Below, in pieces: positions 179-54,756 of a DNA stretch of 64,000 bases. A model generated the notes under the pieces. The model had not been told where the DNA came from. It saw only the letters and a program-made list of their open reading frames with translations, and did no database searches. The stretch lies in the NCBI RefSeq assembly GCF_963676685.1, contig NC_092353.1, positions 59,024,001 through 59,088,000 on the forward strand, in the 5' to 3' direction. Within the stretch, counting starts at the first letter, position 1; the number at the start of each line of letters is the position of its first letter. A program made the position numbers and the translations under genes. This DNA is from Mytilus edulis. Its lineage: Eukaryota.

Positions 179-307
179 ATGCGTTGCAAGTATTATAATC
201 TGCTTTGTAGTAATGATTTGTTTCACATTCACATAAACCAGATTCACAACTGAGGGGAGAGTAACAACTAGTTACGACTGCCGAACAAGGTTCTTTGTAG
301 CTTCCAA
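179..307 (-). CDS. EB/EGF-like exon 13 (FGSYKEPCSAVVTSCYSPLSCESGLCECETNHYYKADYNTCNA)
   Basis: 129 nt, cag acceptor, GTAGGT donor. Confidence 0.9.
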
Positions 308-3300
308 CTGTAAGAAAAAAACAGTTATGATTAAATATTTTGATGTTTATATTTAGTTTTAAATAATAAAGAAAATTTGTCAATAACATGAGAACCTTTT
401 CACTGGTGCCAAATTGAAAAGCATTGAATAAATCACACTATTATTTTATTTATCATTATCACTTTAACTGTTAAGTCAGTTTTTGTTATATCTATTTTGC
501 GTGATTGTATTTATGCATCCCGTCATACTTTGAATGACAAAATTATTTCATGTCTACTTGTGCGAATTTCAAACGCGCAATTTTACACCAGTACTGAAAA
601 CCCTCCTTCCTTGATGGGTGCATTTTACATAGACAAATAAAATCGTATAATATGATCAAAATGAGGATGTAAATTTGATGTATGCCTTTTTGTGCTTCTT
701 CGTTGCATTTGCTGTTTTTATAGTGATTAAGATGATAACATAATGTTGACTGCTGTACCCCTATTTTTGACATTTTTACCTATTGTGTCTGTTTGTTTTG
801 ATCACGCATCCGTGACAATATAATGGAATTTGGTGTCATATAAGTGAGAGGTTTAGCTAGCTATAAAACCAGGTTCAATACACCATTTTCTACATTTGAA
901 AATGCCTGTACCAAGTCAGGAATATGACAGATCTTGTCCATTCGTTTTTGATGCATTTTGTTATTTGATTTTGCCATGTGATTATGGACTTTCCGAATTG
1001 ATTTTTCTCTGAGTTCAGTATTTTTGTGATTTTACTTTTCACTGCAACGAAATTAACCAACGAACCCTAAATTACTTGATATTGGTGAAACCTTGCATAA
1101 ATTTAAAATTGTATTAAAAAAAGAATGCGTCCATAGTACAGGGATGCCCCAATCGCACTTTTCTTTTATGTTCAGTGGACCGTGGAATTGGGATCAACAC
1201 TCTTAAATAAGAAAGATCATATCATAAGGAACATGAATACTAAGTTTCAAGTTGATAGGGCTTCAACTTCATCAAACACTTCCTTGACCAAAAATTTAAC
1301 CTGAGGCGGGACAGAAGGACGGACGAACGGGCGAACAGACGAACGAACAGAAAACATAATGCCCATAAATGGGGTATAAAATGGGGCATAATAAAAACAT
1401 GTTAAGATGGTTTTAACGATGTAATTTCTATTAATGAAATTAAATTGTGTATCCCATGTAACCAATCAATATGCATAATATTTTCCTGTGCTATGTATAT
1501 GCTGTGATACAGTATGCACTTTTGTTTTCTGAATATATTCAAATTAAAAAAATAAGTGCAGACTAAAAACCTGAAATTATACGCAATGTAATACTAGGCT
1601 TTCTATTTCTCGTATGGAAAATAGGTACTTTGTGTCATACACTTTTATAAAAGCGCAAACATGTTATGACTACAATTTACAACATCCATCTGTTGAAGTC
1701 AGAAGTCATACGAAATAGTGTGAAACAAAATGGACGAAATACTAATAGATGAATGTTATATAGCCCCCTCTGCTATACTTGTTTTGTAAAACACTTAACT
1801 AAACTTAGTAAAAGATTTTCTTTTAATGCCTTTGTGAATCACAAATAATACGATTTGCAATGTCTGTTTTTAAAACGAAGAAGGAATGATAATGACGTTT
1901 TTTAACCGTTATGTCAAAACGCATTAAGTGTTATCAATTTATTAATTTATATTTTACCGATGTTCATAAGATTTGCCAGTAGCAGTAATGATATGTTTCA
2001 ATAAGATGAACAACTAAAAATCTCATTAGTATTCCAGGATAGTGTGACGAAAATACGTGTTTGACCCATATAGATGAACAGATGGACACTGTAAATGCAG
2101 TATGGCCACAATCGTAGTGTAGTATTATTATACCTTCAACAAAACTTTCTTAAACAATTCAATGAAAAGCCATATTACTTCAATACATGTAAATTTACAA
2201 ATGTTTTTTCTATTTAGAAAAGGAGCAACATTTTGTTATACATCTAGATCAAAGCAATAAAGCATTACCAATCTGTTTAAATCAGTTTCGTGATATAAAA
2301 AGTGTATTAAACTGCCTGATAAAAGTTATGATGCATAAAAACTAAACCATAGATAGTCTGAAAATAGTATAATGTATGTCGCCTTTTGAAGTAAGGCAAT
2401 TAAATATACAATGCTACAAGATGGTTGAATTTCGAGTTAAATTTAGTATGCGAGTTAAAATAAAATTTAATTTGTTGCTCAATTTAATGTCAATAAGACC
2501 AAAATATTCAATGCATTCTAGGCCAACAATTCGAAATATTATATACGACTAAGACCACATGTGTAATATTTTTATATATACCTGAAAAATTTATATAACT
2601 TTGCCCTTGTATAGCTTTTTAACAGCATTAACATAATTGTTTAAGGAATTGACTCTTTTCGATAAATTAATTTGTTTGCCTTAATAAGGAATACTATCTA
2701 TACTCCATTCGTTTAACTTCAATAATAAATACTTACACGTGTTACATGTATTATCATCCGAGTTGTAGAAATAATTTGGTTCACATTCACATAAACCAGA
2801 TTTACAACTAAGAGGAGTGAAGCAACTGCTAACTGCTGTCGAACAAGTTTCTTTGTATCTTCCAACTGTAAGAAAAAAACAATGATGGTTAAATTTTGTG
2901 GTATTTCATTTAGTTTTTGATAACTGTGTCAAATATATAAAAACATATTGACTTTTGGCAATATTGATAATATCCTCAAAAAGTACTTTTACAGAATGAA
3001 CAAATCAACCCTCAATTACTTGATATCAATTTGAATCTTGCATGGGTGGAATTTTGTAGAAAACAATTTCTGATGGTTTTAAGTAAGCTGTAAGTTATAA
3101 CATGTTAAATGAGTTGTGATTGCGTATTATGTTTATATATTGAAAATGCATGATAGTTTTCCGAGGTAAGAGTATGCAGTGATACAGCGTTCACTTTTTT
3201 GAGGTGAAGATTAAAAAACATAATAGCAGACAAATGACCTAATGTTGCACGCTTTGTCATTCTAATCTTTAATCATAGAAAAACATCAACAGTTAGAAAA

Positions 3301-6300
3301 AGGGGACACTTTTTACAATTCCTCACTACATAGTATGACTAACAATTTGGAACATCATTAGTGGTACTGTTGAGTGTGGAGAAATAAGTTGTTTGCCATA
3401 ATGAACAAAACAGGTCACTGAAATTTAGCTTTCTCGTCTATAGTTAAATGTAAATTTCTTACAAGTTAAAAGCAAAACGTTATAAGTTCCATGCCTCCTA
3501 CAAATGTATTCTTAAGCGCTTTATTGGATTTACTTTCATCAGGAACGCTCAAAACCAAGGATGTATATAAACATGAACATTTGAGGAGCTAAATAAACAA
3601 CAGTTTGTAATGAAAGACTTGAACAGAACACCAAAGCGAATCAAAACAAGCAGGAATACTAATGAAACTTTTAACCATTATCTGAAAAAGCAATACTAAA
3701 GTATTAGTTTTTCGTCAAATTATATTTTTTTTCGGTGTTAACATGATCAAAATTTGTTAGATATCAGTAATGATATGTTTCAATAATTCAATTTTGGATG
3801 TATCACGTCTTCAGAGTGGCTTATAGTGTTTTGACTATCAGCACATAGACATAGTTATGACAAATGACCGTGTCGTCATATATTTGTGTTCAAATTTTTG
3901 TTAAAAAATGAAATTTAAAATCATATTAAATGGAATGACATATATTGTTGTCTATCCGAAATAACATTTGAAAAAACTTAATTAGTGTGCACCATATTTT
4001 TAATGTTATTTCTTCATATACGGAAATAAAATAGTGAAAGTCATATTCAATTTACTATACAGACTAATGAGAAGCTCATTATGTTCACAAAAAATGGGAA
4101 TAAAATAAGTGTTTACCTGTATAAACGAACCAACGAACTAGGCAAATGCAGTTTAGTCCCAATCCTAGAGTAGCAGTAAGGTACACTATAATCTATTTAA
4201 CTGATGGAATAATAATAAATACCTACAAGCATTGCAGGTATTATGATCTGTCTTGTAGTAATGATTTGTGTGACATTCACATAAACCAGATTCACAACTA
4301 AGAGGAGAGTAACAACTCGTTACGGCTGTTGCACAAGGTTCTTTGTATCTATTAACTGTAAGAAAAAAAGCAATCATGATTTGGATGGTTGATGTTTCAT
4401 CTGCTCTCGGATATTTAACGATCTTTATCATTAAGATAAGAATATTTTCATCATTGCAAAATATTGGAAGTCTCTAAATAAAAATCTGTTACAAAATGAA
4501 AGAAAGAAAAATTTTCTAAAAACTATATAAACAAAGAAGTATGCGTAAGACAGCTCAAAAAAGCGTATACATGTTTAAACTCGTCATCATATAACCAATA
4601 TAAAGCTTGTAAATTTACAAATATCTAATTGTTCAAAGAGACAAGCATGGTAATGACATTTGTTTTAACAATAACCTCAAAACGTATTTATTATTACCAA
4701 CTTTTTATCAACAAATAGTTTCAGGAATGTTCGCACGATTTAAATATGTCAGTTAATAGTAATAGTATGTTTAATCATACCATACAGACCAAATATTTAG
4801 CTTAAAAGATTTACAGGAAAATGTGCCTAAAAAAAAACATATGATGATATAGATGAACGGTAGTACTTTGGTGCAATAAACTAGTCTTACTTATACATTG
4901 AAATACTAGTATAAAGCCATATCAAATCAAAACATGAAATTGTACAATGTCTGGTACAACAAACAGGAAGTTTTGCTAGATAATGAATAATGTCGACATG
5001 CTTCAATATTCAAACCTCAATAATAAACACCTACAAGCGTTGCAGGTATTATCATCTGCCTTGTAGTAATGATGTGTTTCACATTCACATAAACCAGTTT
5101 CACATGTAAGGGGGGAGTAACAACTGGTTACTGCTGTCGAACAAGGTTCTGTGTATCTTCCAACTGTAAAATAGGAATCATGATTAATTATTGGATTTAC
5201 AATTTAGTTTTTAGACAATTTACAACCTATGTCGATTCGATTAAAACAGTTTCAGTATTTCTAGAATTCATAATCCCTGAATAAATCATTCTTACAAAAT
5301 AAATAAAAGTACCTTCAGTTACCTTAACATTTTTTTAAACATTGCATTGCGACAAATCTTGAAGGAAAAAGCATATCATCCTTTAGATAAGCTCTTATAT
5401 ATATATTAGAAATAACATTATTAAATGTATAAATTGACAGCAATAATATGCTTCAGACTATTAAAGACTTTTTTACGCTACATGTAAGATAACTTTTTGC
5501 AATTAAAACAAACGATAGAACGTCTGCAAATGTTTTATCTTGTAGCTTTGAAATAAAGTTCCTGTACGAACGACAATAAAAAATCAAATCAAAACTACAG
5601 CATGTTCAAATTTGATGGGAGAAATTTCAGTAAAATATATTGTAACACTGTTGATGAAATATATCTTCAAAGTTAATAAAACAAAAGGCATATTAGATCA
5701 GCAATGCCAAAACAAAGAATTACAACACAGACTTCTTCTAACTAACTATACTAGTTGTTACAAACTATACCCGATGTGTAGTTTTCTGTAGGAGAATAAA
5801 CATATTTTCAAATTAAGGAAGTGAGAAATTTCGCTTGTTTTGCTCTTTTGCGTACATAATGAATTTTGCTGAATTTAATTCTTTTAATTTTTTATAATAG
5901 AACACTTACATGGTTTGCAGGTATTGTCATCTGCATTGTAGTAATAATTTGTTTCACATTCACATAAACCAGAAGCACATACAAGGGGAGAGTAGCAACT
6001 GGTTACTGTTGCAGAACAAGGTTCTTTGTAACTTCCAACTGTAAGAAAAAACAATCATTATTCAATTGTTTGATGTTAAATTTAGTTTTTGGTAATTCAA
6101 AATCTTTGTCAATTAAATATACCATTTAAGCCGTTGTCAAACTCGATAACCCCCAATCAATCACTCTAAAAAGAACATTTAAAATCTTGTATTTTGGAAA
6201 TAATTTCAACCCTTAATGATAAAATTTTGTAGCATTTAAAACAGTTTTAACAATTTTTATTGCGTATCATTATTTTACCAAACATGAAAGTTTCCTGTGC

Positions 6301-9300
6301 TATGTTCAGACAATTTTACAGTTGATGATATTGTTTTTCTTAAGATATAAAAGGAAGATAAGAGCAGGACAAAACATTTAATGTCCATGAGATGTCTTCT
6401 AAGTATACTGTTACGAGTACTCAAGTGAACCAATAGTAGTTATTTGTAGGACTTAAATGCGCACATATATTTACTGTATATTCAATGAGCTGACTAATAT
6501 TACGTCCAATGATTGTACGGGAAAGTCTGTTTGAAATATGTGTAGGCTAAAATTGATGTAAAATGTGAATACAATAAACATGATAAAGTCTAGCCCTATA
6601 CATGTATGTCTTACAGGTTCATCTTTTTAAGAATGAATATATTTTCGTGAGAAATTCTAAAATGTAAAAATTGAAATGGGGAATGTGACAAAAACAACAT
6701 GACCATAGGGCAGACAACAGCCGAAGGCCACCAATGGGTCTTCCATGTAGCGAGAAACTCCCGCACCCGTAGGCGTCGTTCAACTTGTCCCTTAAAATAT
6801 ATTAGCTTGCTGAATGTTTGCTTGCTTTTTTTAAGACATGATGAATTATGTAACACTTCATTCTTTCCAATTAAATATTATCACTTACATGGGTTACAGG
6901 TATTATAATCTGCGTTGTAGTAGTGATTTGTTCCACATCGACATAAACCAGATGCACAACTAAGGGGGGAGAAACAACTGCTTACTGCTGTCGAACAAGT
7001 TTCTTCGTATCTTCCAACTGTGAAAAAAAGCATTCATGAAATAAATGTTTATCATATTTGATGATGAATTAAGTTTGAATAATTTAAAATCTTTTTCAAT
7101 TAGATTAAAATATATTTACGTTTCCAAAAAGGGTATTTCCTCAATTATTCACTCTAACAATTTGAATAAAAAAAACAAGTAACTTGATATTTACTTGAAA
7201 CTTTTATTTCTAGAAAAAAAAAACTTATATGACAATCTTGATATAGATAAGCTCTTATGCATTTTAATAGCGTTTCCCTATTTTACCTCACCATATGCAT
7301 GATAGTTCCACGTGCTATATGTATGCAGTGTAACAGTTCGCACTATTGTTTTCTCTTATTTAGAAAAAAACATAAGTACAGACTAAAATAAGAACTTGCA
7401 CGCTTTGTCTGTTTATCAATCTATTATTTCATAGATAAAATAGGAAACCGCTCTTCTTTTACCATTTATTACTATACAAACACAATTATGCTGATCAATA
7501 GATATTTCCGAAAAGTCTCTGTACCGACTGGTGAAACCGAATTAAATAAATGTGAACTTACGGCTCATTTGTTCCATAAGGCATTTTTGTAAAAAAAAAA
7601 GGCTATTGCTCCGCCGATAATAAGCTTCAAGATTTCAATACAGATTTTTTAACAGCACAATTTAATCTGATGTATTTTCAACCTCAAATATGTACTTTTG
7701 AAAGTTTTCCTACACCTTGGTCGTCAGTGTACAATACAATAACAATAACATATGTGATAGAGACGTTTATAGTTCCACAGATATAAAAACATGTGTTACG
7801 TTGAGTAAAATTGGGAGTGGGAAAAGCAGTATGAGTGATGATTAAATTTACATACAAATTTTTTCCAACAAATTAGTTTAAGAGGTCGGGTGGCCATTCT
7901 GACAACATTAGACAAAAGGACGCACTTCGGGAAAGTGGCAACCTAGAGGAGCTTCTATAAACAAAAATTGAATGTTTCCAAAAAATATGTCAACCAATTT
8001 TAAACCTTCATTTCAATCCTGGTATCTATGATGAGTTAATTTAGTAGTTTTAACTAATCGATGCTAAAAGGCTGTGATTGCTTTTTAAAAAATTAGATAA
8101 GGCTACCAGATAATTTCTTTTGTAAAAAAAACGAAAGAGCAAGTTTTTGTACTTCACTTAAAAAAAAGAGGAAATTCAAAAAATGAAAAAAGGTACTAGG
8201 TTTAACCATTGTTACAGGATAGACAATAACAGTATAGACAAATGTCTATTTGTATGACACTTTTTATAATAAGTATAAAATTGTCCTCCTGTATTCATGT
8301 CATTAATTTGTTGGCAACAGCATAAACAGACATGAAAAAAGCGTACGTTCAAGGTTTTTCTTTTTTTTCTTTACAATGGCAATAGCTCAAAGAAACATTG
8401 ACCTAAATGAGCTAAGAAAATTTGACAAAACTTGTATAACTATATATAAAAAAGTAAAATCACAAAATAGTAAACTCTGAGAAAAAAATTTAAAACAGAA
8501 ATTCTCTAATCTAATGGCAAAATTAAAATCTCAAACGCATCAAACGAATGGATATCAACTGTTATATTTCTGATTTTATACAGGCATTTTCTTATGTAGA
8601 AAATGGTGGATTCAACCTGTTTTATAGCTTTATAGCTATTCCAGAAAAAAATGTATGGGGGGGGGGGGGGTTAGAAGGCAGTTTTTGTCAGCACCCGCCA
8701 CCCAGACAATTGTAATTGAGAATTATAGTGCATTATAGTGTGAAAAGTTGCTCTGATAGCCATCACCCATGTATTATTAATATAATGTGCCTTCCAACAC
8801 CCCCCCCCCCCTCCCCCCATACATTTTTTTCTGGAATAGCCCTCAATCATAAATCGCTAATGTTTAGCTCAAAAGTGGTAGGAAAAAGTAAATTGTTTAC
8901 CTAAATTGACGATACAGGTGAAGGCAATATAACATCGTCCTAAAGGTTTATAAATATAATTAACGTATTTCGAATAAATGATGTTATTGTCATATTTTAT
9001 CCTTCCAACTTTAGTAATAAACACCTACATGGGTTGCAGGTATTGTGATCTGCATTGTAGTAATGGTTTGTTTCACATTCACATAAACCAGAGGCACACA
9101 TGAGGGGAGAGTAACAACTGGTTGCTGCTGTCGAACAAGATTCTTTATATCTTCCAACTGTAAGAAAAGGCAATCATGATTTAATTGATTAAAGTTGCAT
9201 TTAAATTTACATAATTGAAAATTTTCGAAAATTAAATTTGAAAACTTTCACAATTACTCAAACTGATAATCACTCATTGATTGAACAATGCAAAACAACT

Positions 9301-38827: not shown

Positions 38828-38858
<31 letters not shown>

Positions 38859-47800: not shown

Positions 47801-50800
47801 TTGAAATATCAAAGTTTCAATCCAAAATGTTACCCTAAAAACATGAATATGACCTGTGTATTCTGTCCCTTAACATTTTTGCACTTTTAAGCAAGATTTG
47901 TGTTTTTAGCCTACTATTGACTACATACAAATTGCTTTATCAAAGAACAGCTACACAAGCTATCTTTTTTGCAGATGGTGGTATTTTGGCAACTGCATAG
48001 TACTTGAATATAATAAAATACTTACTTGCTTTACAAACATCATCGTCTGGGTCTCGATACTGAGTTCCGGGTTCACATTCTAAAAACATAAAAACATGTA
48101 TTCATAACGGGGCAATTATGTTGAACATCTCTTTCTGTACATTTTTAAATGAATAAACATGAAACTCGATTATTTTATCACATTCCTTATGAACAATCAT
48201 ATTCTGGTTTAAAGCAAGTCACAATATGAGTCTATGACTTCAAGTCACTCAATTTTCACGATGTTTTTACCAATTTATTGACCTTAGTGACTGGGTGATG
48301 CTGATGGATGTGTGACCCTGTAGTCTTAATGTAGAGTGAACCCTAGTGAACAAATTGACTTCAAAGTGTTGAGCTAGGAATGAACCTTATCTATGTTAAT
48401 AATAATGTATGATAATCTAAAGGCCAAGCCCAACAAAAATCTGGAGTGTTCCGTGTTTCCCGTTTTTAGGCTTCACCTGGAATAACCACAGATTGTCGTT
48501 CCTAACGAAAAATTACAGAAAAAACAAGAGCAGCTGTTCTATGTCCTATTGCCTCTGTACTGTGTGGCTCAAACACCAAACTATTGCCCGTCGCGTCCGA
48601 TTCAATTTACGATGTTCGTATTTTGGCTCATACTGGCCTTAAGTTAGCAATACACGGTTAGGAAAAAAGAATTCAAATTGACACTCATAATTTTTAACCA
48701 CCTTCTTTGCCTTCCTTTCTAACAAATAAGACTTTTTATACTGCACTCGTTCTATTTGAGCAGTCAAAATGCGTTGACTGTATATTTCTATGTCATATAC
48801 AGTCACTGACCCGATATCACTTTTCCTCATGAATATTTAAATAGAAATTGCCGAAATAATATTGGAATTATTCATACGACCTCTTCAACCTGTTCTTGTT
48901 TCTAATGCATACAACGATGCGTGGAACGACTCAACATTGTTTCTTTTGCAATTATTGGAAAAACATATTTAATTTGTTAATATTTTTTGTTTGCAACCTA
49001 TAAATCATTATGTTTTATGCTTATGGTTGATATTTAAGTCCATACTCTAACGATTTCGTTCACCATCGAGTGTTGGTTTCAACAGGTAAATGTTAATTTC
49101 ATTGTGTTGTATATTTCTCCGCGAGCATGATGTGAGGCCTTTTTAAAGGGTATGTTCCCCAATATTTAAATCAAATAAATAACCTTAACGCATTAAACAA
49201 CAATTGAAAATGTTTTTTTAGATTGCAGTATAAAGACAATAATAGTGCATTGACTTGACATATCAACGATATAAGGATTCGGCCCGAAACGGGGAAATAG
49301 CTCGGCACAGCCTCGCATTTCCCCGTTTCTAAGCCTCATCCTTATATCTTTGATATGTCAAGTCAATGCACTATTATTGTCTATATATTTCTGTTACTTT
49401 GTGTATATTTATTTATAGAGCATCTCCCTTATATTTCATTTAAGATAGTTATAATCGTGAAATATAATCACCTTTTAGTCATTGTTTGTGTTACCATGGC
49501 AACAATCTGCATTTATTTGATTTAAAGGGGGGTGCCACAAAAGACTCAAAATGTAGTCCGAATAAGAATTGCAATCCATTAGAGTGATATCTTTTCTGAA
49601 ACAATACACATACATCTTTCACAAAGTAAAAATAAAAGCACATGCATTTCGGATCATTTTCCATAAAATTGAATTGAAAAAATCGGGGGTCAAAACATTG
49701 TTGAAAAACATTACAATGATTTTTGGACCTATGGGCAGTACGGATTTAAAAGATAGACTGTCAAACAGAAAATTTTTATAAATGTTCATATATCATAAAC
49801 CCACTTGGAAGACTATATTATACTTCAGCTATCTAAAAATCAGCTTTCATGTACACAAACTTTCATATTAAAAAAATAATCAAAATTATTATGACCAAAA
49901 AGCGAAACTAAACTTATAACTGAATTGCTACCGAAACCAGGGAAACATGACAATTATTGGCCGAAGGTTGAGGGAACATGCTTCAATGTCGACAAACTTA
50001 CAATACAGCTGACCTATAAAACATAGAGAAGTTCAAAGAGTCACTGGAGCCATAAAAAGACTATTTTTGGGAGAAGCTGTAACCGCGCATGATAAGGGTT
50101 CCTTACATCGTAAAAATTACAATGTAAAACAAAACTTGTAGCGGGTGAATTTAGACATAAAAATATATTTTCGTTTACCAGTTTAACTCTGGCAACAAAA
50201 CCGTTGAAGTATTGACGACGTTTTGCATCTACTAATGTAATATTCCAACGGCTTTGTCATGATGTTGTCACTTATTTGGTAATAAAGATATAAACTGTTA
50301 TTTGATATTCCTTTGAAAATGATTACTTTGCAATTTCCTCATGGGATTCCTCCTGTAAAATGACAGAAGAGTACTTTATCTTTAACAAAACAAAAATGCA
50401 CCGAAAATTATTATATAACATGATTAATGATTAGGACTGGATTCAAATATTTACAAGTGTTTCGGTCATCGCAATGTATTCATAAACCGTTTGAGTATGT
50501 CTGTGTATCAATAAACTGCAGGATTTTGAAGCATTCTGTAATGTGCTGAATTCATGTTTCATTCTTAGGCCTTGAATTAGCGAAAATTTATATTAAAAAT
50601 GAACCATACATTTTGAAATTTCTTATTGAACACATCTCTTTGAAATGATTTCGTTAATTTTGATTGTTTTTATATAATTAGAATTAAAGTCTAGTAATAT
50701 GTCTACAAATACACTTTACTTGTTCTAGCTGTTACACTCATGATAGAGTTGGGGAGGCAGTTCGACGTAAACGTATGTATTCGTTCGCTCTCGTCTCCGG

Positions 50801-53800
50801 TTGTATAGGGAACAATTTGTTTCATGTCTCGTGTTTGGATAATACTAGTCACAGGAAAATATTACCTCATCTGTATTTGGGAAAATTTTAGTAATTTTTT
50901 ATCCTTAATGCTCTTCAACGTCGTACTTTATTTGGACTTTTTATTTTTATTTTTTTTCGGGTGTCACTGATAAGTCTTAAGTACATGAAACGTGTGTCTG
51001 GCGTAAATACAAATTTTCAATCCTGGTTTCTAGGATGAGTTTATATGAACATAAGAGCCCTTGCTATAACACTTTGAGGGGTTGTTAGTAGACCTGTTGG
51101 TAAACGATGAAAGGCAAATTGTCTGCCCCTTTTCAATCCCCTAATTTCCAGAGCTAGTTTAAATTTTTATCACCTACTTTGTTATCAGTCAACCATGCAA
51201 ATACTATATATTGTATTGGCTGTATATGTGTAAACGTTCTGAATATGCACAAAAAAAAATTGTATCAGTACATAAACAAACAGAAAATTCAATATCTTAA
51301 TTTAATATCACAGTCAATAGATTTATATAAACGCGTGACACTGATGTCAGGGCACACAACTAGAATGTCTGATATAGCCTTTAACCTTTATTATTTTCAT
51401 TCAAGGCCAAAGCCTTCTTAATAAAAGTACAAAACAGTTGAAACAACCAAGTAAATGAATAAAAGATATTCTGAACATCCAAAGTCAACACATATGTGAA
51501 GGATTTGTTATCTTAAATTAATTGAGACTTTCATCTCCATGTTTTTTGATAAAATTAATTTAGAAACGTTATTGGACTTTATTAACATAAAAGGGAATTC
51601 ATTTTTGTTTTATCGTCTTGTTCCTACATCAGGCATGTACTAAACAGTTGTCCTTGAATATTGTAAAACTTTTTTGGACAGTAATGTAAATGAATGATTA
51701 TTTTACATACATTAAGAATTTAATTAATCTCCAGGCATTGTAGCTGTACAAACATTTGATTCCCTCGCATTTTAGTGTTTTTGTTTCTATGTATAACTTC
51801 TACGTGAATTAATTAGACTTTAACATCGGTGAATACACTCATATATACCAATATTAAAATTTGGTATATGCATCAGAAAAGTCTACAAAAGTCTCATCAG
51901 TGACTTGAATAAAAATATCAAATAGGCAAAATAAATAACGAGACTGAAGAGCATTGCGGACCAGAAATTCCTAAAAGTTTGGCCAAATATAGCTACAACA
52001 ATACTGAGATAGAAAAGCTCAAGAATTTCAAATTATGTTACTAAAAATCTAGACTTACCACAAAAAGGAATATCGCAAAAATCCCATCTGTAAAGAGGGT
52101 CCATGGTATAACACCAAGGTCCGGGCTCATGATCTGGATTACGGCAATAATTGTGTTTCATTTTAGACAATTCCTCAAAATTTGTAGGGCGATGAGGAGT
52201 TTCCACATCCCATCTCTGACAGGCTAAGTTGCTGCGGGTAATGCTGGTTGTTCCTCGATATTCAAGACCTTTCGATGTTGTCTTACACTCCTTACAAAAG
52301 GGAATATCGCAATAAGACCATGTGTCATCAGGGTCCATGGTATAACACCAAGGGCTGTCATCACCGTCTGGATTACGGCAATAATTGTGTTTCATTTTAG
52401 ATACTTCCTCAAAATTCGAAGGACGATGAGGAGTTTCTACATCCCACCTCTGACAGGTCTGGTCGTGTCTAGTTACGCTGATCTGTCCTTCATATTCGAG
52501 ACCTTTCGATGTCGTCTTACAGTCATCCTCTACAATAATCAAACAAAAAAGTTAATTAGAGTAACGAGGACAATTTTGTAATTTTCTTACAGTCAGTTCA
52601 TTGCTGCTTTCGATTTTTATACATCAAAAGCATGAAAAGGATATACTAGTAGATTTATCGCCATAGGCTAATACAGATTATAAGAAAATATGTACCTAGT
52701 TTCATTTATCCTTTCAAGTCTTATATAATAATTCTAATCCGGACATCACTATCAATTTTTGTTTTACTTCAATAACAAGCTGGGTTTTTTTTTCATAATA
52801 TAAAACATTTCCAACTGTTTAGTTGATCTGATGTTGTGCTTGTTTACCACTATAAAACAGGGGCGAAAGATACCAGAGGGATAGTCAAACTCATTGATCG
52901 AAAATAAACAGACAACGTCATACTTAACACAGAAAGAAAGACAAATAGATTAATATTAGTACGCAAGATATAGCCCAGTCAATCTAGCATAAATTAACCT
53001 AACCTTAAAGTTATTGCAACAGAATATTTTTAAGTTCTAATCTTTAGCATTATGCCACAAATATACACAGAAAAAAGTCTCATAAAATCTTACTCGAGGA
53101 AGACTAAAAATAATTATCATTTAAAATTCCAATGGAGATTTGAATTGAAAAGGGAGATAACTCTTGCAAAAAAGACAGAAATATCAATAAAAATTGATAC
53201 AAAATTATAACTTTACCGCTTCTATTCATCAGAATATATTGATTCTTGATATGATATCGGTCTTTAGGGTATAACAAACAACTCTAAAGGTGTTTTCATA
53301 TCTTTAATCAAGCTTTCATCTAGATTTCGTAATGCATTAGTTGACCATTAATTGAATTTTTCAACATGTCAAGGTAAAGAATCTCAAATTTTAAAAAAAT
53401 AGTTAAGCATGTATTCTTCTTTTTGTGGTTTAAAGTTTCTTTAGACAAGTAAGATGCTGAAAAATATGATATACAGATATAAACAATACCAAATTTTCAC
53501 ATTATTTTTTTCCAAACTGGTCACAAAGCTTCAAATTTGCAATTCCTTTAATGAAAAATGCACAAAAAAAATACAACTACCTATTACACTTCGGTTTTGT
53601 ACATTTTATGAGCAGTAGATTATATAATTTAGTTAAAAACAAACTTATAACCCCATCAAAGTATCATACTATACATAAGTTTCAAGAAAATCAACCTAAA
53701 AAGACCCCAAAAAAGACTAAATTTTTTCGGAGTTATCTCCTCTTCCAATGTTGATTTCCATAGGAAATTAAAAATGCTGATTTTGAGATTTCCTCAAGTT

Positions 53801-54756
53801 AGATTTTATGGGACTTTTTTCTGTGTGTATCAAGGGCATTTTATAATGCTATATATTAGAACTAAACCATTTTCTGTTGCAATTAGTTTGAGGTTAAATC
53901 TTAGTTTGACTGGACTAACACAACATAGATAACTAAAGATTAAGCAACATGAACCCCACCAAAAAACTGGGGTTGATGTCAGGTGTTCCGGAAAGGTAAG
54001 CAAATCCACATGTGGCACCTATAGCTCTTTCATGTTAAAAGAAAAATTGAGAGCTCACAGACATGGTTTATCCAGCTTACTGGTCAATGTACATGTCTAA
54101 TGTTAGGAGCCTGCAATTCAGTGGTTGTCGTTGGTTGCTGTTTGTCATACTCTTTTGTTAGTGATTTTTTTTTATAAATATATCCGGTTGTATGGCGTAT
54201 GAATTGTTGAAAGTTATGATATATCGGGCCTATTGTAGAAGATTTCACAATTATATGCCAAATTTAAGAACATTTTTCAAAAATTAAATGTGCTTTCTTT
54301 ACAAATTTTCCTAAGAATTCAATTAGTATTATTATAGAGAATAATTTAAATAAACCAAAAAAAAATATATTTGTCTTTCTTTTTCAAGTTAAATGGGTCA
54401 AATTTGTATCAAAACATTTATCAAAATCTGTGTCATACCAAATTTACTGTCATCACTTTTATGAAAAATTCTGTAGTATACTTCAATTTTTATTTTTTTA
54501 TAAGATTTAGACTCCTTCTGGTCCATTTCGAGGTGATTGAATTTCGGTATTTTCAATTTTTCATTGATGTAGATAAATAAGGAAATATTCGCGACGATTT
54601 ATATTGGACCTTTTTTCTTACTAGAGAATAAATCGCACGCAAAAATAAGTTGGTTAACAATAAGTTAAAGTTCACATTTTTAGAACTTAAATTAAACTTA
54701 CGAGCAGTGGATCCGTGTAGTGTTAACACCAGAATGGTAACGAATAACGTTCTCAT
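179..54756 (-). CDS. Spliced gene model (>=28 coding exons): secreted multi-kringle / EB(EGF-like)-module protein, SP-[KK-L-EB]x3-KK-L-KK-L-EB-KK-L-KK-L-EBx9, >=1818 aa, 3' end unresolved
   Basis: Every exon listed below has canonical AG/GT boundaries. All internal exons have lengths divisible by 3 (471-483, 54-57, 129 nt) and join in phase 1 without stops. Coding total is 5455 nt. Confidence 0.88.
730..1040. repeat. Dispersed SINE-like repeat (reverse-complement fragments at ~8450-8630 and ~25060-25145)
   Basis: ccattttctaca...aatgcctgtaccaagtcaggaatatgacag...gagttcagtatttttgtgattttactttt. Confidence 0.6.
1119..1392. mobile_element. Same HINE-like family, diverged copy
   Basis: aagaatgcgtcc...ggacgaac repeats...atgcccataaatgggg; absent at paralogous ~3060. 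Confidence 0.75.
2737..2865 (-). CDS. EB/EGF-like exon 12 (FGRYKETCSTAVSSCFTPLSCKSGLCECEPNYFYNSDDNTCNT)
   Basis: 129 nt, cag acceptor, GTAAGT donor. Confidence 0.9.
4227..4355 (-). CDS. EB/EGF-like exon 11 (FNRYKEPCATAVTSCYSPLSCESGLCECHTNHYYKTDHNTCNA)
   Basis: 129 nt, cag acceptor, GTAGGT donor. Confidence 0.9.
5035..5163 (-). CDS. EB/EGF-like exon 10 (FGRYTEPCSTAVTSCYSPLTCETGLCECETHHYYKADDNTCNA)
   Basis: 129 nt, cag acceptor, GTAGGT donor. Confidence 0.9.
5910..6038 (-). CDS. EB/EGF-like exon 9 (FGSYKEPCSATVTSCYSPLVCASGLCECETNYYYNADDNTCKP)
   Basis: 129 nt, cag acceptor, GTAAGT donor. Confidence 0.9.
6889..7017 (-). CDS. EB/EGF-like exon 8 (FGRYEETCSTAVSSCFSPLSCASGLCRCGTNHYYNADYNTCNP)
   Basis: 129 nt, cag acceptor, GTAAGT donor. 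Confidence 0.9.
8635..8841. repeat. ~205-bp inverted-repeat MITE with poly-G / poly-C arms
   Basis: gctattccagaaaaaaatgtatg(G)n..gaaggca / tgccttc..(C)n catacatttttttctggaatagc. Confidence 0.8.
9029..9157 (-). CDS. EB/EGF-like exon 7 (LGRYKESCSTAATSCYSPLMCASGLCECETNHYYNADHNTCNP)
   Basis: 129 nt, cag acceptor, GTAGGT donor. Confidence 0.9.
10021..10149 (-). CDS. EB/EGF-like exon 6 (FGRYNEPCSTSVTSCYSPLMCASGVCKCETEHYYNAADNSCNK)
   Basis: 129 nt, cag acceptor, GTAGGT donor. Confidence 0.9.
10938..11250. mobile_element. Same HINE-like family, full copy
   Basis: aagaatgtgtcc...(ggac/gaac/agac)n...gcccctctactatcgtaggtgtggcataaa; absent from the neighbouring EB-unit intron (~9860). Confidence 0.8.
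11411..11539 (-). CDS. EB/EGF-like exon 5 (IGRYTEPCSTAVTSCYSPLVCASGLCECETNNYYIAEDNTCNA)
   Basis: 129 nt, cag acceptor, GTAGGT donor. Confidence 0.9.
11813..11958. repeat. Short inverted repeat element
   Basis: aacttgtaaacggt.g.gat..ccacc / ggtgggaatctcgaccgtttacaagtt. Confidence 0.55.
12253..12309 (-). CDS. Mini-linker exon L7 (DCEDPETQYRDPVDTICKA)
   Basis: 57 nt, tag acceptor, GTAAGT donor. Confidence 0.88.
14420..14890 (-). CDS. Double-kringle exon K13-K14 (471 nt)
   Basis: Two complete kringles; tag acceptor, GTATGT donor. Confidence 0.95.
15283..16170. repeat. Two copies of a SINE-like dispersed repeat in inverted orientation (~15283-15565 and ~15760-16170)
   Basis: gatgtggtatgattgccaatgagacaac...caggctcctg versus caggagcctg...gttgtctcattggcaatcataccacatc; fragments also at ~10510-10690, 37575 and 45240. 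Confidence 0.7.
16404..16460 (-). CDS. Mini-linker exon L6 (DCQDPRMQFRDPMDDICKA)
   Basis: 57 nt, cag acceptor, GTAGGT donor. Confidence 0.88.
17257..17733 (-). CDS. Double-kringle exon K11-K12 (477 nt)
   Basis: Two complete kringles; cag acceptor, GTAAGT donor. Confidence 0.95.
18540..18668 (-). CDS. EB/EGF-like exon 4 (IGSYQDPCSTTVSSCFSPLICASGTCDCEPAHFYNEHDNSCYP)
   Basis: 129 nt, cag acceptor, GTATGT donor, six Cys. Confidence 0.9.
19212..19420. repeat. Dispersed repeat; second copy at ~6667-6800
   Basis: aattga..gaaatggggaat.tg.caa...gcagacaacag.cgaagg.ca.caatgggtc shared by both copies. Confidence 0.6.
19765..19821 (-). CDS. Mini-linker exon L5 (SCENVETQYRDPTDGICKA)
   Basis: 57 nt, tag acceptor, GTAAGT donor. 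Confidence 0.88.
21186..21581. mobile_element. Short TIR element (GGAGGTTCGC...GCGAACTTCC) with its right end locally duplicated
   Basis: Inverted termini, TTAA on the left; acaagcgaacttccttcaactgaaa occurs twice (21568-21623). Confidence 0.6.
23446..23916 (-). CDS. Double-kringle exon K9-K10 (471 nt)
   Basis: Two complete kringles; tag acceptor, GTAAGT donor. Confidence 0.95.
23981..24157 (+). mobile_element. Degenerate 5'-truncated retrozyme family A fragment
   Basis: ttggcacaa...aatgctc...gagcgttaatgataggtctcatgtagactaaacacgcgcgtc...tggtacctttcataactattt. Confidence 0.75.
25540..25583 (+). ncRNA. Type I hammerhead ribozyme, intact; predicted cleavage after C25577 (GUC)
   Basis: GCGTCA-CTGATGA-GTC ttatgta GAC-GAAAC gcgc GTC-TGGCGT: full core, stems I, II and III, palindromic GCGC loop III. 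Confidence 0.92.
25893..25950 (+). ncRNA. Type I hammerhead ribozyme variant (14-nt loop II expansion, weakened stem I)
   Basis: CTGATGA-GTC ttatgttggcggaattatgta GAC-GAAAC gtgc GTC-TAGCTT. Confidence 0.75.
26687..26743 (-). CDS. Mini-linker exon L4 (DCQDPRLQFRDPMDKICKA)
   Basis: 57 nt, tag acceptor, GTAAGA donor. Confidence 0.88.
27218..27620. repeat. HINE-like element with ~160-bp internal tandem repeats and terminal hairpin
   Basis: gatgacaaact...gcaaataagttca unit repeated ~2.1 times; ends ctccgtaacgtcgttgcggggtgtataa. Confidence 0.55.
28257..28739 (-). CDS. Double-kringle exon K7-K8 (483 nt)
   Basis: Two complete kringles; cag acceptor, GTAAGT donor. Confidence 0.95.
29187..31624. mobile_element. 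Tandem dimer of a Helentron-type element carrying ~120-bp internal satellite repeats
   Basis: Subterminal inverted repeat gtcaccaaaacgga / tccgttttggtgac; hairpin tgtgttagcatcctaacaca at both unit ends; repeats of aaaatggccgccgttaccatggaaacagc; empty site at ~18185. Confidence 0.75.
30704..31283. mobile_element. TIR MITE with TTAA-like target (Kolobok/piggyBac-type ends) nested in the satellite
   Basis: TIRs AGGAGTAGGTCCGGTAAGGGCC..TTTGGCCCC / GGGGCCAAA..GGTCTTACTGAACCTACTCCT; flanks TCAA / TTAA. Confidence 0.75.
31909..32037 (-). CDS. EB/EGF-like exon 3 (IGSYQDPCSTTVSSCFSPLICALSVCDCEPAHFYNEHDNRCHP)
   Basis: 129 nt, cag acceptor, GTATGT donor, six Cys. Confidence 0.9.
32096..32780. repeat. 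Local tandem amplification of a ~117-bp intronic segment
   Basis: tatcttggtcaaccaggatcatagc...aattgaatcactcttaaaata four times; single copy in paralogous introns (~37910, ~45570). Confidence 0.75.
33460..33620. mobile_element. Same HINE-like family, truncated copy
   Basis: aagtttcaagatgattggacttcaac...gaaaacataatgcctataaatggggcataaaaa. Confidence 0.7.
33625..34180. repeat. ~168-bp tandem repeat array with terminal hairpin (HINE-like); partial paralog at 41960-42210
   Basis: tttcaaagtcaatagacca...ggccaaataatctcc three times; ends tgtctcgct...agcgagaca. Confidence 0.65.
34255..34311 (-). CDS. Mini-linker exon L3 (ECENPETQYRDPDDGICKA)
   Basis: 57 nt, tag acceptor, GTAGGT donor. Confidence 0.88.
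35861..36337 (-). CDS. Double-kringle exon K5-K6 (477 nt)
   Basis: Two complete kringles; about 13 nt differ from K3-K4 (manual count). Confidence 0.95.
37720..37848 (-). CDS. EB/EGF-like exon 2
   Basis: 129 nt; protein identical to EB exon 1; cag acceptor, GTATGT donor. Confidence 0.9.
38603..38910. mobile_element. Helentron-associated non-autonomous element (HINE / DINE-1 / pearl-like) with (GAAC/GGAC)n core
   Basis: atgcccc near the left end, tetranucleotide microsatellite, terminal hairpin atgccc...gggcat, A-rich target; absent at paralogous ~46295. Confidence 0.8.
40237..40990 (+). mobile_element. Non-autonomous Helitron (754 bp)
   Basis: A|TC...CTAG|T termini, subterminal imperfect hairpin (cccacgatatcacggg), no target duplication; empty site ggcA|Tactt at 47721/47722. 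Confidence 0.9.
41590..41950. repeat. Dispersed repeat; second copy at 52858-54030 is split by the Academ-like element
   Basis: gggacgaa.gataccagaggga.agtcaaactcat...gaaccccaccaaaaact.ggg.tgat..caggtg.tccgga. Confidence 0.7.
42285..42341 (-). CDS. Mini-linker exon L2 (ECENPETQYRDPDDDICKA)
   Basis: 57 nt, tag acceptor, GTAGGT donor. Confidence 0.88.
43418..43894 (-). CDS. Double-kringle exon K3-K4 (477 nt)
   Basis: Two complete kringles; cag acceptor, GTAAGT donor. Confidence 0.95.
45385..45513 (-). CDS. EB/EGF-like exon 1 (IGSYQDPCSTTVSSCFSPLICAFSVCDCEPAHFYNEHDNRCHP)
   Basis: 129 nt, cag acceptor, GTATGT donor; C-x6-C-x5-C-x4-C-x-C-x12-C. Confidence 0.9.
47253..47571 (+). mobile_element. 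Retrozyme family A near-monomer with mutated hammerhead (GAAA to AAAA, 47492-47535)
   Basis: Matches the 25.3-kb unit; absent from the paralogous site at 40060/40061 (tctattt|aacaatg). Confidence 0.85.
48026..48079 (-). CDS. Mini-linker exon L1 (ECEPGTQYRDPDDDVCKA)
   Basis: 54 nt, tag acceptor, GTAAGT donor; homologous to six other mini-exons. Confidence 0.88.
49234..49382. repeat. ~150-bp near-perfect hairpin (MITE-like)
   Basis: agacaataatagtgcattgacttgacatatcaa.gatataaggat / atccttatatc.ttgatatgtcaagtcaatgcactattattgtct. Confidence 0.85.
50850..51042 (+). mobile_element. Degenerate family-A-related retrozyme fragment
   Basis: aatgctcttcaac...gtcactgataagtcttaagtacatgaaacgtgtgtctggcgta; core and stem II are mutated. 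Confidence 0.65.
51835..52034 (-). mobile_element. Degenerate family-A-related retrozyme fragment, sense to the host gene, with GAAAC/stem III lost
   Basis: Reverse complement reads aatgctcttca...gtcactgatgagacttttgtagac-ttttctgatgca. Confidence 0.6.
52059..52529 (-). CDS. Double-kringle exon K1-K2 (471 nt)
   Basis: Two C..Y.G..SVT...CQRW...HNYCRNPD...PWCYT.DP...W..C.IP.C repeats; tag acceptor, GTAAGT donor. Confidence 0.95.
52971..53917. mobile_element. Non-autonomous Academ-like TIR element nested in a dispersed repeat
   Basis: TAGCCCAGTCAA...ATTGCAACAGAA / TTCTGTTGCAAT...TTGACTGGACTA; 3-bp flanks ATA / ACA; host repeat is uninterrupted at 41590-41830. Confidence 0.72.
54702..54756 (-). 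CDS. First coding exon: signal peptide MRTLFVTILVLTLHGSTA
   Basis: Acceptor ttttttcag at 54772, ATG at 54756, GTAAGT donor at 54701. 18 codons plus 1 nt; basic-hydrophobic-small residue pattern; splices in phase 1 to give Q-D-D-C-K of kringle 1. Confidence 0.85.

What the first reader, a model, noticed from the sequence alone, without database searches (positions are those of the whole stretch)
179..54756. Giant protease-less secreted protein with 14 kringles and 13 EB/EGF-like modules: an invertebrate parallel to apolipoprotein(a)-style kringle expansion
Seen: the ORF track shows only scattered fragments, but 28 exons splice into one stop-free frame of 5455 nt with architecture SP-[KK-L-EB]x3-KK-L-KK-L-EB-KK-L-KK-L-EBx9. 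Known: plasminogen has 5 kringles and HGF 4, both with an N-terminal PAN domain and a C-terminal protease(-like) domain; very large kringle arrays are best known from apo(a). Here kringle 1 directly follows the signal peptide and the kringles are followed by a stalk of 9 EB/EGF-like repeats. Inference: a multivalent extracellular binding protein (immune recognition, adhesion or matrix), possibly membrane-tethered if a TM exon lies beyond the window. I do not recognise this architecture as a named family.
Basis: partly seen in the sequence, partly recalled or inferred. Interest (0 to 1): 0.85.

Follow-up and report, generated by a model that had tools for sequence, protein, structure and literature searches.

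The report
Giant mussel kringle and cysteine-module gene
A real, expressed mussel gene strings 14 kringle domains and dozens of small six-cysteine modules into one huge extracellular protein; it runs far beyond the window, possibly into a polycystin-like membrane receptor, and its function is untested.

Summary
On the minus strand, 28 exons (54756 to 179; 5455 nt) carry canonical AG/GT sites. All internal exons are phase 1-1 and none has a stop. The layout is signal peptide, seven two-kringle exons (14 Pfam Kringle hits), seven 19-residue two-cysteine linker exons and 13 six-cysteine 43-codon exons.

RNA contigs from four studies show the predicted splices KK6>L6>KK7>L7>EB5. Two of those runs also fit EB9>EB10.

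- Pfam does not recognise the "EB" modules as EB or EGF. Their fold stays unresolved.
- The nine-module stalk is cut by the window edge. There are 38 such modules, and a 15th kringle and five variant modules follow on the same strand.
- Next on that strand come polycystin-1-like exons (PLAT, polycystin domain, channel). Two paralogous loci show the same order.

Whether all this is one gene is unproven; I give it about 45%.

Protease-less kringle arrays are common in invertebrate databases, for example about 19-20 kringles in a sea urchin. Part of this gene is already filed as "plasminogen, partial" in Mytilus galloprovincialis. It is a new variant of a known kind.

The parts
54702..54756 (-). 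Exon 1: start codon and 18-residue signal-peptide-like leader, ending in phase 1
   Evidence: Sequence read; exon table. The leader-to-kringle junction is also used in database model VDI66200.1. This exon is unique in the genome.
52059..52529 (-). Exon 2, KK1: two kringles, 471 nt
   Evidence: Pfam Kringle E=3.7e-46, 2 stretches. Boundaries. 155/156 residues identical to VDI66200.1.
48026..48079 (-). Exon 3, L1: 54-nt two-cysteine linker
   Evidence: Conserved in all 7 units. Present in VDI66200.1.
45385..45513 (-). Exon 4, EB1: 129-nt six-cysteine module
   Evidence: No Pfam hit.
43418..43894 (-). Exon 5, KK2: two kringles, 477 nt
   Evidence: Pfam Kringle E=8.2e-36. 97.3% nucleotide identity to KK3.
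42285..42341 (-). Exon 6, L2: 57-nt linker
37720..37848 (-). Exon 7, EB2: six-cysteine module
35861..36337 (-). Exon 8, KK3: two kringles, 477 nt
   Evidence: Pfam Kringle E=3.6e-41.
34255..34311 (-). Exon 9, L3: 57-nt linker
   Evidence: The L3-EB3-KK4 order is also in VDI66200.1.
31909..32037 (-). Exon 10, EB3: six-cysteine module
28257..28739 (-). Exon 11, KK4: two kringles, 483 nt
   Evidence: Pfam Kringle E=1.4e-41. 155/160 residues identical to VDI66200.1.
26687..26743 (-). Exon 12, L4: 57-nt linker, followed directly by a kringle exon
23446..23916 (-). Exon 13, KK5: two kringles, 471 nt
   Evidence: Pfam Kringle E=5.2e-46.
19765..19821 (-). Exon 14, L5: 57-nt linker
18540..18668 (-). 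Exon 15, EB4: six-cysteine module
17257..17733 (-). Exon 16, KK6: two kringles, 477 nt
   Evidence: Pfam Kringle E=2.1e-40. The 3' end at 17257 is confirmed by an RNA joint in 4 runs.
16404..16460 (-). Exon 17, L6: 57-nt linker
   Evidence: Both ends are confirmed by RNA joints in 4 runs.
14420..14890 (-). Exon 18, KK7: two kringles, 471 nt
   Evidence: Pfam Kringle E=3.1e-40. Both ends are confirmed by RNA joints. Aligns with plasminogen K1-K2, domain E=1.3e-40.
12253..12309 (-). Exon 19, L7: 57-nt linker
   Evidence: Both ends are confirmed by RNA joints.
11411..11539 (-). Exon 20, EB5: first module of the uninterrupted stalk
   Evidence: The 5' end at 11539 is confirmed by an RNA joint to L7 in 4 runs.
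10021..10149 (-). Exon 21, EB6
9029..9157 (-). Exon 22, EB7
6889..7017 (-). Exon 23, EB8
5910..6038 (-). Exon 24, EB9
   Evidence: Its unique 3' end appears in RNA contigs of two runs, fused to an EB10-type 5' end (table 5c; an inference).
5035..5163 (-). Exon 25, EB10
   Evidence: See EB9 for the inferred RNA junction.
4227..4355 (-). Exon 26, EB11
2737..2865 (-). Exon 27, EB12
179..307 (-). Exon 28, EB13: last exon inside the window. It ends in phase 1 at a GT donor, so the frame is still open.
   Evidence: The next module exons lie beyond base 1.

Best explanation
The window holds the first 28 exons (1818 codons) of one much larger, expressed Mytilus gene for a giant extracellular mosaic protein.

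Anatomy. A cleavable leader is followed by seven kringle pairs, each pair on a single exon. Each pair is capped by a 19-residue two-cysteine mini-exon. Then comes a long run of 43-codon six-cysteine modules: 38 in all, 13 of them in the window.

Proposed mechanism (inferred). The kringles are the ligand-binding heads. About four of the 15 keep the full residue set that I recall as the lysine-binding pocket of plasminogen kringle 4. Many heads in a row would give avidity for lysine-rich or similar ligands. The disulfide-rich modules would form a stiff stalk of roughly 100 nm that presents the heads.

Origin. The array grew by recent tandem duplication of whole KK-L-EB units of about 7.6 kb.

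The far end is not settled. My largest single option (about 45%) is that the gene runs on through a 15th kringle and five variant modules into the adjacent polycystin-1/REJ-like exons. The array would then be the ectodomain of a membrane receptor-channel protein.
For: Shown:
- The exon table has perfect phase 1-1 symmetry, canonical splice sites and no stops.
- 14 Kringle domains. The kringle pair aligns with plasminogen K1-K2.
- RNA contigs of four studies carry the predicted junctions KK6>L6>KK7>L7>EB5, with no intron coverage outside repeats. Contigs in two runs fit only EB9>EB10.
- The 34 stalk-type modules are under purifying selection: mean dN/dS 0.41, with dN<dS in 98.8% of 561 pairs.
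- All 38 modules lie on one strand of one locus with open frames. The module is almost absent elsewhere in the genome.
- KK2 and KK3 are 97.3% identical in nucleotides, and their introns are about 91% identical.
- Independent gene models in M. galloprovincialis use the same SP>KK1, KK1>L1, L3>EB3>KK4 and KK4>L4 junctions.

For the extension:
- Exon 28 ends with the frame open.
- 25 more module exons, a variant module, a 15th kringle only 373 nt after the last module, and four more variant modules follow. Every one checked is in phase 1.
- Next comes a conserved phase-1 exon. After it come REJ-like, PLAT (E=7e-15) and polycystin-domain (E=1.7e-22) exons.
- Two paralogous loci on contig C7 show the same order: module array, conserved exon, REJ-like exon, PLAT. 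One of them also has an upstream kringle.
- The leader exon has no second copy in the genome.
Against: - No RNA junction was tested upstream of KK6 or downstream of EB10. Continuity of the whole array, and above all the link to the polycystin-like exons, therefore rests on strand, phase and paralog order only.
- Symmetric phase 1-1 exons splice in frame in any combination, so an open frame alone proves little.
- An 11-kb gap between the 15th kringle and the next variant module could hide a gene boundary.
- Segmental duplication of two neighbouring genes would also keep their order.
- The modules match no Pfam family and no solved structure by sequence. Fold matches are weak.
- Ligand binding is inferred from residue patterns only. 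11 of the 15 kringles lack part of the canonical pocket.
- The tissue of expression is unknown, because run identities are coded.
Confidence: 0.8

Rival explanations
1. Soluble secreted protein. The gene ends inside the stalk or just after the 15th kringle, through an unrecognised terminal exon or intronic polyadenylation. The polycystin-1-like gene downstream is then a separate neighbour with its own start.
For: - The 11-kb gap without recognised exons between the 15th kringle and the variant modules.
- Reading through most stalk-module donors reaches a stop within a few codons, so short alternative ends are easy to make.
- Public M. galloprovincialis models do not join the two parts.
- Many invertebrate kringle arrays look like soluble proteins.
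Against: - No stop-bearing terminal exon was found.
- Every module keeps an intact phase-1 donor.
- No second copy of the leader exon exists.
- An exon with a phase-1 acceptor and no start codon follows the last variant module. It is conserved in the paralogs right after their arrays.
- The same order recurs at two other loci.
Confidence: 0.4
2. An exon store used piecemeal. Symmetric cassette exons are skipped or chosen in many combinations, so no transcript carries all 28 (or 70-odd) exons and the '14 kringles plus 13 modules' protein is only nominal.
For: All internal exons are phase 1-1, so any subset stays in frame. Only six junctions were seen in RNA.
Against: - Every junction seen in RNA links genomic neighbours in order. 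No skipping joints were listed in the 6-kb stretch in any of four runs.
- Purifying selection acts across all modules.
Confidence: 0.12
3. A decaying repeat array or an assembly artefact. On this view the repeated exons are recent duplicates without function, or are inflated by misassembly of a shorter gene.
For: Units 2 and 3 are 97% identical in their exons. Such repeats are hard to assemble. The public M. galloprovincialis models are garbled in exactly this region.
Against: - No stop or frameshift occurs in 28 in-window exons or in 30 further module exons, and all splice sites are intact.
- dN/dS is 0.41.
- Spliced RNA is seen in four studies.
- Stalk modules are 67-92% identical to one another, so they are not collapsed copies.
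Confidence: 0.03

Closest known systems
VDI66199.1 / VDI66200.1, 'plasminogen, partial' [Mytilus galloprovincialis]
   Same: The same gene in the same or a sister species. Kringle exons are 97-99% identical, and the leader>KK1, KK1>L1, L3>EB3>KK4 and KK4>L4 junctions are the same.
   Different: These are fragmentary, partly mis-spliced models of 694 and 736 residues. They hold about 5 kringles and one module, lack the stalk entirely, and carry a misleading name, since neither PAN nor protease domain is present.
Apolipoprotein(a) (primates) and the hedgehog apo(a)-like protein (XP_060061097.1, 44 kringle motifs)
   Same: Long tandem kringle arrays that grew by recent internal duplication of near-identical units.
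   Different: From my knowledge of the families, apo(a) derives from plasminogen and keeps a protease-like domain, and vertebrate kringles are split between exons. Here there is no PAN or protease domain. Two whole kringles sit on one exon, and linker exons and six-cysteine modules are interleaved.
Invertebrate 'apolipoprotein(a)-like' kringle arrays (Diadema antillarum XP_071478660.1, 1867 aa, about 19 kringles; Tegillarca granosa KUTeg_021228, 12; Crassostrea virginica, 7; Owenia fusiformis, 8 plus a membrane span)
   Same: Protease-less multi-kringle extracellular proteins outside the vertebrates.
   Different: None of them has the L mini-exon motif or the six-cysteine module. Identity to the mussel kringles is only 33-46%.
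Tmed-krg1, a six-kringle protein of flatworm anchor cells that is predicted to be membrane-bound (PMC9229212)
   Same: A multi-kringle ectodomain in a lophotrochozoan. RNAi gives a non-adhesive phenotype, and the authors propose binding to a lysine-rich secreted adhesive. It is a functional precedent for kringle arrays as lysine-binding anchors.
   Different: It has no demonstrated sequence orthology, a different architecture (six kringles and no module stalk) and a different tissue context. No experiment exists for the mussel gene.
Polycystin-1 / sea-urchin REJ receptor family
   Same: Downstream on the same strand lie a REJ-like exon, a GPS-like motif, PLAT, a polycystin domain and a PKD-channel region. 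This family is known to carry very large, variable adhesive ectodomains (from my knowledge).
   Different: I know of no described member with a kringle-bearing ectodomain, and a literature search found none. Physical continuity with the kringle gene is not shown.
EB module (PF01683) and EGF-like domains
   Same: A small disulfide-rich module on a symmetric phase 1-1 exon. The cysteine spacing C-x6-C-x5-C-x4-C-x-C-x12-C fits the general EGF pattern.
   Different: There is no Pfam EB or EGF hit. The module has 6 cysteines, not 8. The same spacing also fits the knottin consensus, and the best weak fold matches are knottin toxins (Z<=3.0), alongside Pfs25/RIPR EGF domains (Z 2.1-2.5).

Membership tests
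Kringle domain (PF00051) | Profile match above the curated threshold | tested here: met
   All seven large exons score 122-156 bits against a cut-off of 34.3, with two stretches each. The 15th kringle beyond the window matches by motif and by homology.
Kringle domain (PF00051) | Six conserved cysteines per domain | tested here: met
   12 cysteines per two-kringle exon.
Plasminogen / HGF / apo(a) family | N-terminal PAN/apple domain before the kringles (absent in apo(a)) | tested here: not met
   The leader exon splices directly onto kringle 1. Pfam finds no PAN domain.
Plasminogen / HGF / apo(a) family | C-terminal trypsin-like (S1) protease or pseudo-protease domain | tested here: not met
   No GDSGGP-type or TAAHC-type motif in any frame of 294 kb around the gene. 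A motif scan would miss a pseudo-protease domain that has lost these motifs. The downstream coding sequence is polycystin-like instead.
EB module (PF01683) | Pfam profile match | tested here: not met
   No hit at E<=1 on ten module ORFs, and none at E<=10 on VDI66200.1, which holds L3+EB3 contiguously.
EB module (PF01683) | Eight conserved cysteines | tested here: not met
   Six invariant cysteines in 43 aligned modules. L plus a module together give eight, but only four of the 13 modules in the window follow an L exon.
EGF-like domain | Six cysteines with EGF-compatible spacing on a phase 1-1 exon | tested here: met
   C-x6-C-x5-C-x4-C-x-C-x12-C. The exons are 129 nt and phase 1-1.
EGF-like domain | Recognisable by an EGF-family profile or by fold (C1-C3, C2-C4, C5-C6 pairing) | tested here: inconclusive
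   There is no Pfam hit and no PDB sequence hit. The AlphaFold model has pLDDT 84. Foldseek E-values are >=1.7, and VIA Z is <=3.0 with knottins on top and EGF domains at Z 2.1-2.5. One indirect argument favours EGF pairing: the L mini-exon equals the C5-C6 part of a variant module and stands alone after a kringle pair. That makes sense only if C5 pairs with C6 (inference).
Polycystin-1 / REJ family (for the extended gene) | PLAT domain, polycystin domain and PKD-type channel region | tested here: met
   These lie in DNA 61-71 kb beyond the window's low end, on the same strand. PLAT E=7e-15 and Polycystin_dom E=1.7e-22. The channel region has PKD_channel look-alikes scoring 0.96.
Polycystin-1 / REJ family (for the extended gene) | Kringle/module array and polycystin-like exons on one transcript | not testable with these tools
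Only indirect support exists: strand, phase and the same exon order at two paralogous loci.

The most novel reading that the evidence does not exclude
The whole 125-kb stretch is one gene. A leader, 15 kringles, 7 linker loops and 43 six-cysteine modules form the ectodomain of a polycystin-1/REJ-like receptor, which continues with a REJ-like region, a GPS-like motif, PLAT, an 11-pass region and a channel-type domain. The protein would exceed 5,000 residues. This would be the first polycystin-family receptor with a kringle-bearing ectodomain. It would be one member of a small mussel family: two paralogs on contig C7 carry 12-16 or more variant modules in front of the same receptor core. A plausible role is sensing a lysine-rich ligand or a mechanical load, for example in gamete recognition, cilia or attachment.
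Probability: 0.45. Interest if true: 0.8.

Novelty: new variant of a known kind. Interest (0 to 1): 0.55.

Why it matters
Kringle arrays are textbook features of vertebrate blood proteins, and in invertebrates their function is almost unexplored. This gene is a clean, expressed example that keeps growing by duplication of whole units. It has an unusual two-kringles-per-exon structure. It also carries a six-cysteine module that no domain library recognises and that is almost confined to this locus.

Public mussel annotations miss nearly all of it and name the rest 'plasminogen', so comparative and expression studies are blind to it. If it proves to be the ectodomain of a polycystin-1-like receptor, it would give that receptor family a candidate ligand-binding head that can be tested. 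Polycystin-1-family ligands are, to my knowledge, still poorly defined. It would also provide a tractable mollusc system with three paralogs of different array length.

Tried and rejected
Searches that found nothing:
- Pfam on single module exons and on a database protein holding L+module gave no EB or EGF hit.
- A profile of 43 modules against PDB sequences gave no hit at E<=10.
- Foldseek and VIA-align on the AlphaFold model gave only weak, mixed matches, so the fold is left open.
- I searched for RNA-derived database ORFs spanning the 15th kringle. The only close hit was an 80-residue exon-only fragment, with no junction information.
- A word-limited search with the L3-EB3 region among proteins of 405-1288 residues found only the M. 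galloprovincialis fragment. This is not evidence of absence at other lengths.
- The ESM Atlas confirmed the channel region but gave no architecture.
- Literature searches for kringle with Mytilus, bivalve, PKD1 or polycystin found no description of this gene or architecture.
- Rfam on the intronic repeats that dominate RNA depth gave nothing.
- Pfam on the upstream plus-strand ORFs and on a 146-residue ORF in the stalk gave nothing.

Candidates discarded:
- One candidate exon between the variant modules and the REJ-like exon proved to be a dispersed repeat with 62 genomic matches.

Full report
**Where the window lies.** The window is G000:C10:59,024,001-59,088,000 of a 1.37-Gb assembly, with G+C of about 0.29-0.36. 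The kringle exons are 97-99% identical in protein to VDI66200.1 of Mytilus galloprovincialis. The genome is therefore a Mytilus, either that species or a close relative.

**The observation.** The mechanical ORF list shows seven long minus-strand open frames with paired kringle signatures and many short cysteine-rich frames.
- Pfam confirms two Kringle domains in each of the seven frames, with E-values of 8e-36 to 4e-46.
- Comparing the seven stretches between kringle exons and the next exon revealed one short conserved element in each. Alignment shows a 57-nt exon (54 nt in unit 1) flanked by ttttag and gtaagt. It encodes a C-x15-C loop.
- A script that used only peptide anchors plus the nearest in-phase AG and GT gives 28 exons running from 54756 to 179 and totalling 5455 nt. 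All internal exons have lengths divisible by three and are phase 1-1. None has a stop. The order is SP-[KK-L-EB]x3-KK-L-KK-L-EB-KK-L-KK-L-EBx9.
- The start exon encodes 18 mostly hydrophobic residues and ends in phase 1. The junction codon and the next exon put kringle 1 directly after the leader.
- Only the single codon at each junction was translated. The spliced model was not joined, searched or folded.

**Transcription and splicing.**
- Twenty runs hold the KK7 exon. Fourteen have contig totals of 30-113 Mb, which is transcriptome-sized.
- I laid four of them, from four studies, on 11400-17399. Coverage falls on the predicted exons and on two intronic repeats, and nowhere else in the introns.
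- Four joints with CT..AC ends (GT..AG on the minus strand) link 17257/16460, 16403/14889 (cut +1), 14420/12309 and 12253/11539. Three of them are seen in all four runs; 14420/12309 is seen in three. One 778-nt contig carries EB5, L7, KK7, L6 and KK6 together. The link from the kringle part to the module stalk is therefore shown.
- Table 5c of the same call lists contigs in two runs that leave an EB5-like 5' end, insert five letters, and re-enter at an EB5-like 3' end. Among all 38 modules, only EB9 ends with those letters and only EB10 shares EB5's first 31 bases. These contigs therefore fit an EB9>EB10 junction. This is an inference.
- Junctions upstream of KK6 rest on splice signals and on the public gene models, which use the same SP>KK1, KK1>L1, L3>EB3>KK4 and KK4>L4 junctions.

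**What the modules are.**
- The kringle pair aligns best with plasminogen kringles 1-2 (domain E=1.3e-40; whole chain 3e-98), then with HGF, prothrombin and apo(a).
- I compared the 15 kringles with the pocket residues of plasminogen kringle 4 as I recall them: Asp55, Asp57, Trp62, Phe/Tyr64, Arg71, Trp72, Tyr74. The first kringles of KK5 and KK7 keep all of them. The first kringles of KK4 and KK6 keep them in a longer loop. The other 11 each lack at least one. Lysine-type binding is therefore plausible for a minority and unproven for all.
- The 'EB' modules are 42 residues plus a split codon, with six invariant cysteines spaced C-x6-C-x5-C-x4-C-x-C-x12-C across 43 copies.
- They get no Pfam hit and no PDB sequence hit as a profile.
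- An AlphaFold model has pLDDT 84 and four short strands. It finds only weak neighbours: knottin toxins at Z<=3.0, and Pfs25/RIPR EGF domains at Z 2.1-2.5. I therefore call them six-cysteine modules of unresolved fold.
- One indirect clue favours EGF-type pairing. The L mini-exon is clearly the last third (C5 to C6) of a variant module found further down the locus. The kringle's last cysteine, one residue, and L's first cysteine recreate that module's C-x-C. A free-standing C5-C6 piece makes sense only if those two cysteines pair with each other.

**Selection and growth.**
- Across the 34 stalk-type modules, mean dN is 0.18 and mean dS 0.45, a ratio of 0.41. dN is below dS in 98.8% of pairs, and nucleotide identity ranges from 67 to 92%.
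- KK2 and KK3 are 97.3% identical (dN/dS 0.2) and their introns are about 91% identical over 1.4 kb. A 7.6-kb KK-L-EB unit was therefore duplicated recently. KK5 and KK7 are 89.5% identical.
- These are maintained coding exons, not debris.

**The gene does not end in the window.**
- Exon 28 ends in phase 1 at a GT donor.
- I fetched flanking DNA. On the same strand it holds 25 more modules of the same type down to window coordinate -33,580. There is one variant module at about -7,400 to -7,520. A single-kringle exon at about -33,950 to -34,240 begins only 373 nt after the last module. Four more variant modules lie at -45,500 to -48,750. Coordinates printed are one too high.
- A genome-wide search finds 38 modules of the stalk type. 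All lie in this locus on this strand with open frames, and only a handful of weak relatives lie elsewhere.

**What comes next on the strand.**
- About 760 nt after the last variant module lies an exon with a strong pyrimidine tract, a phase-1 acceptor and no start codon.
- Further on are a REJ-like exon, a GPS-like motif, a PLAT exon (E=7e-15), a polycystin-domain exon (E=1.7e-22) and a PKD-channel region. Together these form a polycystin-1-like core.
- The PLAT exon has paralogs at C7:89,703,140(+) and C7:47,845,961(+), at 84% and 82% identity.
- Upstream of each, on the same strand, lie arrays of at least 16 and at least 12 variant modules. Each array is followed within 3-4 kb by a homolog of the conserved exon and then by the REJ-like exon. 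One of these loci, and a further paralog on C9, also have a kringle upstream.
- Three loci thus share the order: module array, conserved exon, REJ-like, PLAT.
- The leader exon of the window gene has no second copy anywhere in the genome.
- I read this as good evidence (about 75%) that the variant modules belong to the polycystin-like genes. I give about even odds (45%) that the window's gene is continuous with its neighbour. Duplication of a gene pair would preserve the same order, and an 11-kb gap after the 15th kringle could hold a boundary.

**How it most likely works.**
- Shown: a leader, extracellular-type disulfide-rich domains only, and spliced RNA.
- Inferred: the kringles act as ligand-binding heads, and their number gives avidity. 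The modules form a long stalk. I assumed about 2.5-3 nm per small disulfide module, which gives on the order of 100 nm for 38 modules.
- If the protein is tethered to the polycystin-like core, ligand capture or load on the stalk could be passed to the membrane part, as is proposed for polycystin-1 and for the sea-urchin receptor for egg jelly (from my knowledge of that family).
- A functional precedent for kringle arrays as anchors is the flatworm protein Tmed-krg1. It has six kringles and is predicted to be membrane-bound. Its knock-down abolishes adhesion, and its authors propose that it binds a lysine-rich adhesive (PMC9229212). Mussel adhesive proteins are lysine-rich (from my knowledge), so they are candidate ligands. 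Nothing here tests that.

**Comparison with what is known.**
- It is not a member of the plasminogen/HGF/apo(a) family. It has no PAN domain, no protease motif within 294 kb, and a different exon structure.
- Protease-less kringle arrays are not rare outside vertebrates. Examples are Diadema (19-20 kringle motifs), Tegillarca (12), Crassostrea (7), Owenia (8 plus a membrane span), hemichordates and amphioxus. Most are auto-named 'apolipoprotein(a)-like'.
- This genome alone gives at least 128 kringle matches. However, only this locus has two kringles per open frame.
- Three things appear to be new: the KK-L-module unit, the locus-specific six-cysteine module and its 38-fold array, and the possible polycystin link.
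- Public annotation covers only a garbled fragment called 'plasminogen, partial'. A search with the L-module region found nothing else among proteins of 405-1288 residues. That search is limited by length and by shared words.

**Verdict.** The gene is larger and differently bounded than thought, and the EB label is unsupported. I rate it a new variant of a known kind with moderate interest. Interest would rise if the receptor reading holds.

Noticed in passing
window 12800-13200 and 15200-16200: Two intronic repeats dominate the RNA contigs of all four runs, with summed depth of thousands and up to about 23,000, against about 2-29 for the kringle exons. They have many loose ends and internal joints. 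No Rfam family matches. They are probably highly expressed dispersed elements, not part of the gene.
   Followed up: partly
window 54757-54780: A good acceptor-like site (tttttttcag) lies 15 nt upstream of the start ATG, and an in-frame ATG lies about 15 codons further up. This suggests an untranslated first exon further upstream that I did not locate.
   Followed up: no
G000:C7:89,602,000-89,703,500(+) and C7:47,761,000-47,846,300(+); also small scaffolds C921 and C2331: Two paralogous loci carry arrays of at least 16 and at least 12 variant six-cysteine modules, followed by polycystin-1-like exons. They look like a small family of receptors with module stalks of different length. The scaffolds may be alternative haplotypes of one of them.
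   Followed up: partly
genome-wide, e.g. C4:27.0-27.3 Mb, C6:2.4-2.5, 5.3 and 31-32.6 Mb, C2:88.6 Mb, C11:46.3-46.9 Mb, C1:33.4-33.7 and 107.8-108.6 Mb: There are at least 128 kringle-encoding matches in clusters on many chromosomes, some with stop codons. The kringle domain is strongly expanded in this mussel genome. Only the window's locus has two kringles in one open frame.
   Followed up: no
window 57272-62766, plus strand: A run of medium-sized open frames (100-179 residues) upstream of the gene has no Pfam match. They may be an unclassified mobile element.
   Followed up: partly
L009:7902-8156 (C10:58,971,902-58,972,156): An 85-residue open frame between the variant modules and the REJ-like exon has 62 genomic matches at up to 98% identity, many with TGA stops. 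It is a young dispersed repeat, not an exon.
   Followed up: yes
G000:C4:81,390,813-81,391,245(+): Isolated copies of the six-cysteine module with stop codons. This looks like a decayed fragment of the module array on another chromosome.
   Followed up: no
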